Source of the DNA: Chrysemys picta bellii
Taxonomy: Eukaryota
Reading direction: 5' to 3'
Assembly (NCBI RefSeq): GCF_011386835.1
Contig: NC_088797.1
Coordinates: 32,612,001 to 32,676,000 of the forward strand
Length of the DNA stretch: 64,000 bases
Each line of letters starts with the position of its first letter. The stretch's first letter is position 1. Both the position numbers and the translations under genes were made by a program. The notes under the pieces were generated by a model, which saw only the letters and a program-made list of their open reading frames with translations, was not told the DNA's origin and ran no database searches. Positions 23,071-27,338 of this stretch are shown in pieces.

Positions 23071-26000
23071 TCACTCATGCACAGTGTCCGGCAGGCTGTG
23101 GGGGGATTTGAAGGCATCGGGGATGTCGCACTCCAGTTTGCAGATAACCTTGTAGATGGATTTCTTCCAGGAGGGGTCAGCATCACAGCCCCGGGAGATG
23201 GCACTAAAGAACTCACGCAGGGTGATCTGGGAGACCTCCAGGAACTTGCTGGGGATCTGGGTGGGGGGAAAAAACACAAGGGCATCACCCCATTAGGACT
23301 GGTGAAGCCTGGCTCAGGAGGGGTTTTAGCGGGGCTCTTTTATTCCTCCCCCAAGGTCAGTTTCCTCTTGTCAATTGCTCCCATGCTGCCAAGATCACCC
23401 CAGGCCTGCACTCCTCACCTCAGCCGGGATCCCTCCCCTGTGCTCCCCTTCCCATCCACTTGCCCCACTGACGGGGCCCCTCCCAAATCTCCACCCGGTC
23501 TGTGCATCCCACGTTGCCTGCCTCCCTGCTGCCGGGTCCCCTGCCCACCTCGTAGTCATTGGCTTTGTTGTAGTGCTGGTTGAGGACACGTGCCAGCTCT
23601 GAGTCCCGGGTGACAGTCAGCGTCTCGGCGCTGAGCACCCCATCGCTCAATGCCTGGCGTGAGAACTTCTCCATCTGGATGTAGAAGAACTCCCGGAAGT
23701 TGCTGAACCACTTGATGAGCTGGGACGTGATGCAGCGATTGAACTAGGGGGACGGCAAGAGGAGAGAGACATTGCCATCAACACAGCCCTGGGCCTCAGT
23801 CCCCCAGTACACTGAAAACAGAGGAGTGACCCACCTTCTCTGCCCCAACTCCCTGGGAAAAGGGGGGTCCGATCGCCCCTCCCTGCCCCCCAATTCCCTG
23901 CAAACAGGGGTCCAATCCCCCTTCCTGCCCTCCAACTCTCTGGGAAAAGGGAAGTCTAATCCCCCCGTGCTGTCCCCTATGACTCTGGGAAAAGAGGAGG
24001 CTGATTCCTGTTCTGCCCATTCCCTGGCAAGGACGGGTTGTGATCCCCCCGCATCTCTCGTCACATGATCTACCTAAGTGTCTGTTTCTGGCAACAGGGT
24101 CAGTGGCGGGGAAGGGGCAAGGGACCCTCCCTCCACGGATGGATGCTGCTAGAGGACCTGCATGGGCCATATAGAAGGGGGCCTGGATCCATGGGGAGGG
24201 TCCATGGTCAAACTGTCCCAGAGTTGGGGAGGTTCTGAGGGACCCACCTTGACGTCGGAGAAATAGGTCTTGAGCGTCCCGGAGCTGGGATAGCGAGTGT
24301 AGAAGAACATCAGCTTGGCCTTCTTCAAGTGCCCAGGGGTGAGGCCCTCCTGGGAATGACGGGGTTAAGGAGCAACCAGGGGAAGGGCTATAATGGGGGC
24401 ACCTCAGTTGAAGGCCCTCCAGAGAGCAGACCCCCCCCCCGCCCCAAGAAAGCAGTGACCGCTGCCCACGAGCTGAGAATAGAACCCAGGAGAGTCCTGA
24501 CTCCCAGCCCCTCCTCCCCATTGTACCCCACAAATCTCACCTCTCAATCTCTTATCCCTGCCCCCGCAGCTCGGCTCAGGCAGTCAAGGGAGAGGGGGCG
24601 TCAGTGGAGGACAGGTTGTGTGTGTGGGGTGAATATGTGTGGAGCAGTGTGTATGGGGGCTTTCAGGGGAGGGGGCAGCATGGGGGAGGCAGTCGGGGGG
24701 GCAGTGTGTAGGGCGGGGGCTAGTTGAGGGAGGGGGCAGCATGTAGGGCGGGAGCAGGGCCGGCTCCAGGCACCAGCTTAACAAGCAGGTGCTTGGGGTG
24801 GCCAAGGGAGAGGGACGGCACCAGCGGCAATTCGGGGCGGCAGGTCCCTCACTCCCTCTAGGAGCGAAGGACCTGCCGCTGAACTGCTGCCGCCGATTTT
24901 TTTTTTTTTTTTTGCTTGGGGCGGCAGAAATACTGGAGCCGGCCCTGGGCGGGAGGCAGTCAGGAGAGGGGGCTGCGTGTAGGGCGGGGGGCAGTGTGTA
25001 TGCTGGAGGGCAGTCAGGGGAGGGGGCAGTGTGTAGGGAGGGAGGAAGTTGAGGAAGGGGGCAGTGTGTAGGGAGGGACGAAGTTGAGGGAGGGGGCAGT
25101 GTGTAGGGCAGGAGGCAGTTGGGGGAGGCGGCAGTGTGTAGGATGGGGTACAGCGGTGGGAGGGGACAGTGTGTAGGATGGGGTACTGCGGAGGGAGGGG
25201 ACAGCGTGTAGAATGGGAGGCAGTCGGGGGAGGGGGCACTGTGTAGACCACGGGGCAGCAGGGGGAGGGGGCAGCGTGTAGAGCAGGGGACAGCAGGGGG
25301 AGGGGGCAGAGTGTAGGGTGGGAGGCAGCCGGGGGAGGGGGCAGCGGGAGTGTCTTTGACAGTCCACCCCCACTAATCCTGAGGATTATTCCCAGCAGGT
25401 GCCTAGCGCGTTTCAGGAGGAAGCTGTTTCTGAGCTGATGCAATCAGCTTAGGGTCCGCCTCAGCCTGGTTAACCATTAAACCTACCCCAGGCCTCAGGG
25501 GACTAGCGGTGGGTGGGTGGTGTGGGGGGAACAGGTGATGCTAACACCTGCCCTGCCAACGCCTCACAGGTGGCAGCAAGATGTGAGCAGGTGTGGAGTG
25601 GAGCGGAGCGGAGCGGGGCAGGGCCGGAGGGGGTGGGGGGGCTGGCTGAGCTGATGGCAGGGCTGTCAGTGTATGGGGTGTGCGGGAGGTGGGGGGACAG
25701 GAGTGTGTGTATGGGGTGTGTGTGTATGCAGCATATGGGCCAGGGGAGGGAGAAGGAAGAGGCTGTGCGGGGATGTCCGGGTCAGTACGTGTATATGAGG
25801 CAGGGGCCAGTGTGTGGGTCTATGGGAAACAGTGTGTGTATGGACGGTGAATGTGTGTAGGTTGGTTTGGGGAAGGGTGTGTGGGGGGGGTGGGTCAGTG
25901 GAGGATAGGTTGTGTGTGGGGTGAAAATGTGTGGGTTAGTTGGGAGCAGGGTTTGGGGAGGCAGTGTGTATGTGTGGGTTGGGGGGCATGGTGTGTGTGT

Positions 26001-26215
26001 GTGTGCATGAGGAGTGAATGTGTGTGGGTTAGTTCAGAGCACAGTGTGGGGGTCAGAGGGGGTCAGACTGTGTGAGTGGGTCAGGATGTGCATGGGGGTG
26101 AATGTGTGTGGGTTAGTTTGGGGCAGAGTGTGGGGGGCTGGGCACGTATGAGGGGGGTGAACGTGTGTGGGTTAGTTGTGGGCAGGGTGTGTGCATGGGT
26201 CAGTGGGGGACAGGA

Positions 26216-26246
<31 letters not shown>

Positions 26247-27338
26247 TGTGGGTTAGTTGGGGGCAGGATGTGTATGGGGGGAAGGGATCAGACCCTCTCC
26301 CCACTCTACCCCAAGTCCTGGCTGGCTACTAAAGGATATTGAGGGCTTGTAGAGGGCTGGCTCCAGGCCATGGTGCGTCTCTGTGGCCTGGCTCTTGGGG
26401 AGCTGGCGCTCAGTTGGCCCTGCCAGCTGGAAGAGGGCACAGTGTGGCCGCAGCAGGTGGCGTGAGGACAGCTTGGTGCGCAGGCTCACACCCTCCCAGT
26501 AGGCCTCTCCCGCTGCTCTGTCCTTGAAGGCTGCCACGTATGGTGGAACAGCCATGGGCTGGGGGAAGGTGCCGGCCACCAGCTCAGGGGTGGCACGGGG
26601 CAGGCTCTTCCTCACCACTAGAGGAAGTGCCTCTGTCTGGTCACTTGGGTAACTGCAGGGGGGCTCCTCCGGTGGGGGTTGCTGGCGGGCAAACACCTGC
26701 ACGACCGTGTCCACCACCTGGGTCATGGCTGCTCCAAGCTCCTCCTTCAAGGCCTCGGCCAGGGTGCCAGGGTGCCTACTCCCTCCCCCAGGACGCTGGG
26801 TGCTGGCTCCAACTCTTCCTGGCTCCTGGGACCAGGCTGCCCCCACGTTGCTTCCTTCCTCTTGGGCCACCCCGCTGTAGATCTGGCACAGTTTCTCCTG
26901 CAGCTGGAACACTTGCTCACGCATCTTCTCCAGCTGCTGCTTGAGCTGGCTCCGTTCCTGGGCCCGGCGGGAGCGGCCGTACCTGGTGCCCCCTTCTTCC
27001 AGGCCCCCATCACGGTACGAGCTGCTGATGCTGCACACAATGTTCTCTACCCGGGCCCGCTTGGCCCAGGCAAAGTCCTTGGCACCTTCTGGATCCAGAC
27101 CCCTCTTCGCCGGGACCTCCCTGTCCCCCTGGGAAGACTCGCCCGAGTCACAGGCCTCTGCCAGCTTGGCCTTCACACTCCTGCGCAGCCATTGGGAAAT
27201 GAGATCACTGTCAGGGTAAGGGCCTGCCATGTCACCACAGCCCCTAGGTTGGTTCTGGAGGCTTAGCTGGTAGGCGGGGCCCTCCAGCTGCTGCTCCTCT
27301 AGCCGCTCCAGCTTGAGATTGGTTCCGGAGAAGGACAT
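23071..27338 (-). CDS. Prospero-family homeobox transcription factor, divergent PROX1-like paralogue (PROX3-like), ~493-495 aa
   Basis: Exons 27338-26340, 24355 (or 24349)-24248, 23743-23549 and 23256-23071. Family motifs: PYPDSDLISQWLRR, AKRARVENIV, LKQQLEKMREQVFQLQEKLCQIY, LKEELGAAMTQVVDTVVQVF, DQTEALPLVVRK. Homeo-prospero domain [17 protein letters not shown]...FNRCITSQLIKWFSNFREFFYIQMEK...DPSWKKSIYKVICKL...HE*. Confidence 0.93.
24600..25345. repeat. G-rich ~30-bp minisatellite in the PROX U12 intron
   Basis: Unit approx. ggggagggggcagtgtgtagggcgggaggcagt, repeated either side of the MITE. Confidence 0.85.
24755..24947. mobile_element. Non-autonomous hAT DNA transposon (MITE), 193 bp
   Basis: Perfect 15-bp TIRs CAGGGCCGGCTCCAG / CTGGAGCCGGCCCTG and an identical 8-bp TSD GGCGGGAG at 24747-24754 and 24948-24955. 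Confidence 0.93.
25640..26285. repeat. GT-rich degenerate repeat with a (GT)n microsatellite
   Basis: Recurring tgtgtgggttagttgggg modules; pure (TG)n at ~26216-26241. Confidence 0.75.

What the first reader, a model, noticed from the sequence alone, without database searches (positions are those of the whole stretch)
24350..26339. PROX minor intron starts AT but cannot end AC: AT-AG or AT-AT U12 intron
The 5' site ATATCCTTT and branch point TCCTTAAC are textbook U12 signals, at the position just before the homeodomain where Drosophila prospero has its classic AT-AC intron. Downstream of the branch point the sequence is cccgtcAT|TCC CAG|GAG, with no AC. Both in-frame options are rare terminal pairs: AT-AT (adds Ser-Gln) or AT-AG (branch A ~15 nt from the end, a more typical distance). 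This could be an intermediate in U12 subtype switching, and GT-AG-only annotation would mis-model the gene.
Basis: partly seen in the sequence, partly recalled or inferred. Interest (0 to 1): 0.78.

Follow-up and report, generated by a model that had tools for sequence, protein, structure and literature searches.

The report
Turtle PROX3 minor intron, two ends
A rare "minor-spliceosome" intron in a painted-turtle prospero-family gene has lost its usual AC end and is spliced at two neighbouring ends (AT, or AG six bases on), giving proteins with or without two amino acids; this is real, but it is a known rare kind and RefSeq already models both forms.

Summary
On the minus strand a coding exon ends at 26340. 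The intron opens with ATATCCTTT (26339-26331). The branch site TCCTTAAC lies at 24371-24364, followed by cccgtcAT|TCCCAG|GAGGGC. There is no AC.

- AT-AT (intron 26339-24356, keeps Ser-Gln): three runs, three studies, two organism labels.
- AT-AG (intron 26339-24350): the one run on record as RNA.

An unspliced contig and three other turtle genomes confirm the genomic AT, so it is not a base error.

The two products equal RefSeq Chrysemys picta bellii isoforms X3 and X2. The gene is therefore already modelled correctly here, though it is mis-modelled in at least six other species.

The gene is the third prospero paralogue, PROX3 (tree). Across species:
- Gar prox3 has AT-AC followed by Ser-Gln codons.
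- Emydura has AT-AT and no AG.
- Pelodiscus has AA at that place.
- Carettochelys has a GT donor, and its model uses the AG.

This is good comparative support for a subtype switch caught midway. AT-AT and AT-AG U12 introns, and their proposed role as intermediates, were described by Sheth et al. 2006. It is a new member of a known kind, of moderate interest.

The parts
26340..27351 (-). Large coding exon of the PROX3-type gene. ATG of the short isoform at 27338; acceptor ttttttgcag at 27352. It ends ...CCC TCA in phase 0.
   Evidence: ORF and translation; contigs of four runs cover 26340-27352; acceptor read; 100% match to Chrysemys picta bellii protein.
26331..26339 (-). U12-type 5' splice site ATATCCTTT (A-type).
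   Evidence: every minor-intron joint starts at 26339/26340; conserved in Chelonia, Emydura, Pelodiscus and gar; G at +1 in Carettochelys.
24356..26339 (-). Minor intron, AT-AT form (1984 nt). It leaves TCCCAG (Ser-Gln) in the mRNA.
   Evidence: Joint 24355>26340 in X1, X2 and X11; product equals RefSeq isoform X3 P0042 exactly.
24350..26339 (-). Minor intron, AT-AG form (1990 nt). It removes Ser-Gln.
   Evidence: Joint 24349>26340 in X13; product is the exact suffix of RefSeq isoform X2 P0036.
24364..24371 (-). U12 branch-point sequence TCCTTAAC. The branch A (24365 or 24366) lies 9-10 nt from the AT end and 15-16 nt from the AG end.
   Evidence: invariant in five turtles, TCCTTGAC in gar.
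24350..24355 (-). TCCCAG hexamer: Ser-Gln codons in the AT-AT form, last six intron bases in the AT-AG form.
   Evidence: TCGCAG in gar, TCCCAA (still Ser-Gln, no AG) in Emydura.
24248..24349 (-). Exon coding [34 protein letters not shown], the start of the Homeo-prospero domain.
   Evidence: Pfam PF05044, E 1.9e-15, profile positions 1-33; contigs.
23744..24247 (-). Ordinary GT-AG intron (504 nt).
   Evidence: Joint 23743>24248 in X1, X2 and X11; termini read.
23549..23743 (-). Exon, middle of the Homeo-prospero domain.
   Evidence: Pfam; contigs.
23257..23548 (-). Ordinary GT-AG intron (292 nt).
   Evidence: Joint 23256>23549 in all four runs.
23071..23256 (-). Last coding exon, end of the Homeo-prospero domain, with the stop codon at 23071-23073. 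The 3' UTR runs on below 23071.
   Evidence: Pfam; contigs reach 22900; CDS check.

Best explanation
This is the ancient U12-dependent (minor-spliceosome) intron of the prospero family, here in the painted-turtle PROX3 gene. It sits just in front of the Homeo-prospero domain.

Its 5' site (ATATCCTTT) and branch site (TCCTTAAC) are perfect. The ancestral 3' AC has become AT. Relative to gar, the spacer between branch site and 3' end is 3 nt shorter.

The minor spliceosome still cuts at the old place, now AT, 9-10 nt after the branch A. This gives an AT-AT intron and keeps the conserved Ser-Gln. It also cuts at the next AG, 6 nt further on (15-16 nt after the branch A). That AG is supplied by the Gln codon CAG. 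The result is an AT-AG intron and a protein two residues shorter.

Shown here:
- both junctions in RNA;
- the genomic AT;
- the orthologous AT-AC in gar;
- the states of the two ends in five turtle genomes.

Inferred:
- the two sites compete because they bracket the 11-13 nt optimum for the branch-site-to-3'-end distance;
- splicing depends on U11/U12/U6atac;
- the Carettochelys state (GT donor with the AG end, Ser-Gln lost) is the completed AT-AC to GT-AG subtype switch, and the other turtles show its intermediate.
For: - Sequence.
- RNA joints: 24355>26340 (AT..AT) in X1 (depth 108), X2 and X11, from three studies and two organism labels. 24349>26340 (AT..AG) in X13, the run on record as RNA. 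Both neighbouring GT-AG introns are removed in the same contigs.
- X11 and X13 share six or more exon differences from the window. They are therefore the same or sister species, yet show different ends (table 3).
- RefSeq or GenBank pairs of isoforms with and without Ser-Gln exist in Chrysemys, Trachemys, Dermochelys and Macrochelys. The window's two products match Chrysemys X3 and X2 exactly.
- Orthologous 3' ends: gar AC|TCGCAG|GAG, 12 nt from the branch A. Emydura AT|TCCCAA|GAG. Chelonia AT|TCCCAG|. Pelodiscus AA|TCCCAG|. Carettochelys GTATCCTTT donor with AT TCCCAG|. Bird PROX1 AC|ATGCAG|GAA.
- Ser-Gln or x-Gln before EGL is conserved across PROX3 and PROX1 proteins.
- Literature: AT-AT, AT-AG and AT-AA U12 classes, with AT-AG proposed as a switch intermediate (PMC1557818). 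Optimum distance 11-13 nt, and alternative or error-prone U12 3' site choice (PMC3584512).
Against: - The evidence is from assembled contigs (Logan), not raw reads. Proportions, tissues and co-occurrence of both forms in one sample are not shown. Each run yielded only one form.
- The genomic 3' end of the organism behind X13 was not seen. A species difference could explain its AG use.
- The Carettochelys junction rests on a gene model, which may simply prefer GT-AG. GT-AT is also a known U12 pair.
- Dependence on the minor spliceosome is inferred from the signals, not tested.
- Whether the two-residue difference matters to the protein is unknown.
Confidence: 0.85

Rival explanations
1. Each species or individual uses one 3' end only. 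Under this reading AT-AT is the turtle junction, and the single AT-AG contig (X13) reflects a genomic difference in that organism or an assembly choice. There would then be no alternative splicing.
For: Every run gave just one form. X13 carries a different organism label, and its intron end was not covered. Contigs drop minority variants, so nothing shows both forms together.
Against: X13 and X11 share the same exon differences from the window, yet X11 shows AT-AT. Four turtle species carry annotated isoform pairs with and without Ser-Gln. The 3' region is nearly invariant among cryptodires.
Confidence: 0.1
2. The intron is really removed by the major spliceosome from a cryptic GT donor about 30 nt inside the intron to the AG. 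This is how the models of Emys, Platysternon, Gopherus and Chelonoidis are drawn (...KPS-ISFSSQPG..-EGL).
For: Those published models exist.
Against: No contig in four runs shows such a joint. All minor-intron joints start at 26339/26340. The ISF residues are simply ATATCCTTT read through. The same read-through appears in retained-intron PROX1 products.
Confidence: 0.02
3. The AT at 24357-24356 is an assembly or sequencing error for AC, and this is an ordinary AT-AC intron.
For: None found.
Against: An independent unspliced contig in X1 across 24326-24782 shows no difference at 24350-24360. Chelonia, Emydura and Carettochelys assemblies also read AT, and Pelodiscus reads AA.
Confidence: 0.01

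Closest known systems
U12-type AT-AC intron of Drosophila prospero (twintron) and vertebrate PROX1 intron 2
   Same: Same gene family and same position just before the Homeo-prospero domain. Same ATATCCTT donor and TCCTT-type branch site. The exon after it starts with x-Gln then EGL (bird PROX1: AC|ATGCAG|GAAGGC; PMC2831892).
   Different: The 3' end is AT, not AC. A second end 6 nt downstream is also used. No nested U2 intron was seen. The gene is the PROX3 paralogue.
Non-canonical A-type (AT-AN) U12 introns: AT-AT, AT-AG, AT-AA (Sheth et al. 2006, PMC1557818; de Wolf et al. 2021, PMC8280824)
   Same: Same signals with a variable last base. Sheth lists 6 AT-AT, 11 AT-AG and 3 AT-AA introns in human, plus human-mouse switches such as CUL4B AT-AG/AT-AT and IK AT-AT/AT-AA. 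That paper proposes AT-AG as an intermediate of AT-AC to GT-AG switching.
   Different: Here the AT-AG form is not a change of the last base at the same site. It is a shift to an in-frame AG 6 nt downstream, so the switch costs two codons. AT-AT, AT-AA, AT-AG and GT-AG states are all seen for one intron within one order of reptiles.
Alternative or error-prone 3' splice-site choice in U12 introns (reviewed in Turunen et al. 2013, PMC3584512)
   Same: Two closely spaced 3' ends are used after one branch site. The choice is governed by distance from the branch site (optimum 11-13 nt).
   Different: Both ends are in frame and both are annotated in several species. The sites sit at 9-10 and 15-16 nt, on either side of the optimum.
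Tandem (NAGNAG-like) acceptors of major introns
   Same: A short in-frame shift of the acceptor adds or removes one or two residues.
   Different: A different spliceosome is involved, the spacing is 6 nt, and the upstream site is not an AG.

Membership tests
U12-type (minor-spliceosome) intron | 5' splice site matching [A/G]TATCCTT directly at the exon border | tested here: met
   ATATCCTTT at 26339-26331, the only copy in the window. The joints start there.
U12-type (minor-spliceosome) intron | Branch-point sequence TCCTTRAY close to the 3' end (optimum 11-13 nt, PMC3584512) | tested here: met
   TCCTTAAC at 24371-24364. The branch A lies 9-10 nt from the AT end and 15-16 nt from the AG end. 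Both are near the optimum but neither is at it.
U12-type (minor-spliceosome) intron | Orthologous position to an established U12 intron | tested here: met
   Same codon position as bird PROX1 (AT-AC) and gar prox3 (AT-AC). PROX1 and pros are listed as U12 in PMC2831892.
U12-type (minor-spliceosome) intron | Removal depends on U11/U12/U4atac/U6atac snRNPs | not testable with these tools
   Needs a knockdown or an in vitro splicing assay.
AT-AC subtype of U12 introns | Terminal dinucleotides AT...AC | tested here: not met
   No AC lies after the branch site. The ends used are AT and AG.
Non-canonical A-type U12 intron (AT-AT / AT-AG) | U12 signals, with RNA-supported junctions ending in AT or AG | tested here: met
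   Joints 24355>26340 and 24349>26340.
Subtype-switch intermediate (AT-AC to GT-AG) | An AT-AC ancestor and a GT-AG relative at the same intron | tested here: inconclusive
   The AT-AC ancestor is met by gar prox3 and PROX1. A GT donor is present in Carettochelys, and its model uses AG. That junction was not checked in RNA.
PROX3 subfamily of prospero homeobox genes | Groups with gar/bichir prox3 and lungfish, apart from PROX1 | tested here: met
   Clade support 100/100 and a species-tree-like order inside the clade. No PROX2 outgroup was included. Synteny was not tested, apart from an ARL2-like neighbour.

The most novel reading that the evidence does not exclude
The two 3' ends may be a maintained, possibly tissue-regulated, alternative splicing event of the minor spliceosome, kept since the turtle ancestor. 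It would yield PROX3 proteins with or without Ser-Gln at the N-terminal edge of the homeodomain, with different properties. The turtle series (AT-AC, AT-AT, AT-AA, AT-AG, GT-AG) would then be the first case in which every step of a U12 subtype switch, including a 6-nt acceptor shift, can be tested in living relatives.
Probability: 0.15. Interest if true: 0.55.

Novelty: new member of a known kind. Interest (0 to 1): 0.4.

Why it matters
It is a clean natural example of how an AT-AC minor intron can turn into a GT-AG one. First the last base drifts (AC to AT or AA) while the site stays in use. Then a nearby in-frame AG starts to compete. Then the first base changes to G. All these states are present in related living turtles.

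It shows that 3' site choice by the minor spliceosome follows position more than the terminal base. It also explains why the gene is mis-modelled or split in several turtle and salamander annotations. In practice, annotation pipelines need AT-AN rules for this gene family.

It does not open a new kind of biology. The classes and the intermediate idea are in the literature, and RefSeq already has both isoforms for this species.

Tried and rejected
- Motif frequency as evidence: one ATATCCTTT against 0.19 expected is not significant by itself. I relied on position, conservation and RNA instead.
- Pfam on the large exon: no family.
The short isoforms of Dermochelys, Pelodiscus and Ambystoma are not on record. 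The state of the intron in salamanders is therefore known only from proteins (SSSQ-EGL).
- The Prox-family preprint (10.64898/2026.09.25.754218) has nothing on introns or turtles.
- Intron retention: X1 has low-depth contigs over much of the U12 intron (about 6-15 against about 108-146 on exons) and almost none over the two GT-AG introns. This fits slow minor splicing. However, contig depth is a poor measure and parts of the intron are repeats, so I make no claim.
- Cryptic GT donor models and a base error were rejected (see rivals).
The window has no N. No human sequence was used.
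Full report
**What is in the sequence.** Read on the minus strand, a long coding exon (acceptor at 27352, ATG at 27338) ends ...TAC AAG CCC TCA at 26340. ATATCCTTT follows at 26339-26331. About 2 kb downstream, TCCTTAAC lies at 24371-24364. After it comes cccgtc AT (24357-24356) TCCCAG (24355-24350) GAGGGC.... The exon from 24349 codes [34 protein letters not shown], which Pfam places at positions 1-33 of the Homeo-prospero domain (PF05044, E 1.9e-15). Two further exons complete the domain. 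There is no AC between the branch site and the exon. Both an AT end (24356) and an AG end (24350) keep the frame. The window has no N.

**Is it more than chance?** Not by motif counts alone. ATATCCTTT occurs once against 0.19 expected, and TCCTTAAC three times against 1.0. The case rests on position, conservation and RNA.

**RNA evidence.** I searched public runs with the large exon. I then laid contigs of four runs, from four studies and three organism labels, on window:22900-27700. All four are spliced transcripts. The two ordinary introns are removed (joints 23256>23549 and 23743>24248, both GT-AG on the minus strand).

For the minor intron there are two exact joints, with no ambiguity in placement:
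- 24355>26340 skips 24356-26339 (AT...AT). It occurs in X1, X2 and X11.
- 24349>26340 skips 24350-26339 (AT...AG). It occurs in X13, the only run on record as RNA.

X11 and X13 share the same exon differences from the window, so they are the same or sister species with different ends. No joint uses any other donor. A low-depth unspliced contig of X1 spans 24326-24782 and shows no difference at 24350-24360. The genomic AT is therefore independently confirmed.

The limits are these. Contigs are not raw reads, so proportions, tissues and co-occurrence in one sample are not shown. Organism names are coded.

**Identity of the gene and state of annotation.** The large exon is 100% identical to 'prospero homeobox protein 1-like' of Chrysemys picta bellii. 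The AT-AT product assembled from the window equals RefSeq isoform X3 (P0042) residue for residue. The AT-AG product is the exact C-terminal 493 residues of isoform X2 (P0036). Isoform pairs with and without Ser-Gln are also on record for Trachemys, Dermochelys and Macrochelys.

The gene is thus already modelled with both non-canonical junctions in this species.
- Emys, Platysternon, two Gopherus and Chelonoidis read ISFSSQPG.. into the intron and then use a cryptic GT.
- Emydura is split into two genes.
- One Pleurodeles model runs on into the intron.

A maximum-likelihood tree puts the turtle gene with axolotl, lungfish, bichir, paddlefish and gar 'prox3'. That clade (100/100) is separate from PROX1 of all jawed vertebrates, and its internal order follows the species tree. 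The gene is PROX3, not PROX1 or PROX2.

**Comparison of the intron ends**.
- Gar prox3: ATATCCTTTT ... TCCTTGAC, 12 nt, ending AC|TCGCAG|GAGGGG. This is a canonical AT-AC intron followed by Ser-Gln codons.
- Bird PROX1: ATATCCTTTT ... AC|ATGCAG|GAAGGC.
- Emydura (side-necked turtle): AT donor, ...catcAT|TCCCAA|GAG. It has the same AT end, no AG at all, and CAA still codes Gln.
- Chelonia: identical in layout to the window.
- Pelodiscus: AT donor, ...gtcAA|TCCCAG|.
- Carettochelys: donor GTATCCTTT...catcAT TCCCAG|GAG. Its RefSeq protein lacks Ser-Gln.

Proteins of PROX3 and PROX1 across vertebrates keep x-Gln before EGL. The ancestral arrangement is therefore AC, then two codons ending in CAG, then EGL.

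The AT end is shared by both turtle suborders, so it goes back to their common ancestor. From general knowledge, that is on the order of 200 million years ago. Turtles also have 3 nt less than gar between branch site and 3' end. This puts the old site 9-10 nt from the branch A, and the CAG's AG 15-16 nt from it.

**How it most likely works.** The minor spliceosome recognises the perfect donor and branch site. Its 3' site choice depends mainly on distance from the branch site, with an optimum of 11-13 nt. It tolerates any last base in A-type introns, and it is known to be error-prone (PMC3584512; PMC8280824; PMC1557818).

With AC lost and the spacer shortened, two usable ends bracket the optimum, and both are cut. 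Both are in frame because the downstream AG belongs to a conserved Gln codon. A later A-to-G change at +1, as in Carettochelys, would favour the AG end and complete an AT-AC to GT-AG switch at the price of two residues. The junctions and genomic states are shown here. The competition by distance, the snRNP dependence and the Carettochelys junction are inferred.

**Comparison with what is known.** AT-AT, AT-AG and AT-AA U12 introns are established rare classes. Human has 6, 11 and 3 of them (Sheth et al. 2006). That paper already lists switches among them between human and mouse, and it suggests AT-AG as a viable intermediate. Alternative U12 3' sites are also known.

What this case adds is modest. 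It gives a series of states for one intron within one reptile order. It also shows a mechanism of switching by a 6-nt acceptor shift rather than by changing the last base in place. I found no paper on it. The one Prox-family preprint says nothing on introns.

**Verdict.** This is a new member of a known kind, already captured by RefSeq isoforms for this species. Interest is moderate (0.4).

Noticed in passing
window 23071-27351 (-); proteins P0041, P0023, P0049, P0091: The gene groups with gar, bichir and paddlefish prox3 and lungfish, apart from all PROX1 (100/100). Axolotl and Pleurodeles have it too. A 2026 preprint (10.64898/2026.09.25.754218) states that Prox3 was lost in tetrapods. Turtles and salamanders appear to contradict that. 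No PROX2 outgroup was in my tree.
   Followed up: partly
window 52498-53200 (-): A second likely U12-type intron, of the GT-AG subtype, lies in an ARL2-like gene. The exon ...RELRLLML ends at 53201 and is followed by GTATCCTTTT. TCCTTGAC lies at 52518-52511, 14 nt before cacag|. The next exon codes [20 protein letters not shown] (Pfam Arf, E 3e-11). It was not checked in RNA.
   Followed up: partly
proteins P0034, P0035, P0039, P0044, P0047, P0007/P0030, P0011: Public models of this gene are wrong at the minor intron in Emys, Platysternon, two Gopherus, Chelonoidis, Emydura and Pleurodeles. They read through ATATCCTTT as Ile-Ser-Phe and then use a cryptic GT, or the gene is split, or the model runs into the intron.
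   Followed up: yes
proteins P0013-P0017 (PROX1-type, mostly from transcript assemblies): Several PROX1 products end ...SGSA-ISF.., which is translation into the retained U12 intron. This fits the known inefficient splicing of the PROX1 minor intron (PMC6717393).
   Followed up: no
window 24600-25330 and 24750-24990 (inside the intron): The intron holds a degenerate array of units of about 60 nt (ccctacacactgccccctcc...). It also holds an interspersed repeat with an A-run at 24900-24915. That repeat draws contig depth in the thousands in all four RNA runs, and many contigs break there.
   Followed up: no
window 27436-27560: Contigs of X1, X2 and X11 replace 123 bases upstream of the coding exon with 7 other letters (GACTCTC). 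The ends are non-canonical. This is probably an indel or repeat difference between individuals rather than an intron.
   Followed up: no
L005 1725 and 3615: The lark (Alaudala) PROX1 contig carries the exon end plus ATATCCTTTT donor twice, 1.9 kb apart with identical flanks. This is probably an assembly duplication.
   Followed up: no
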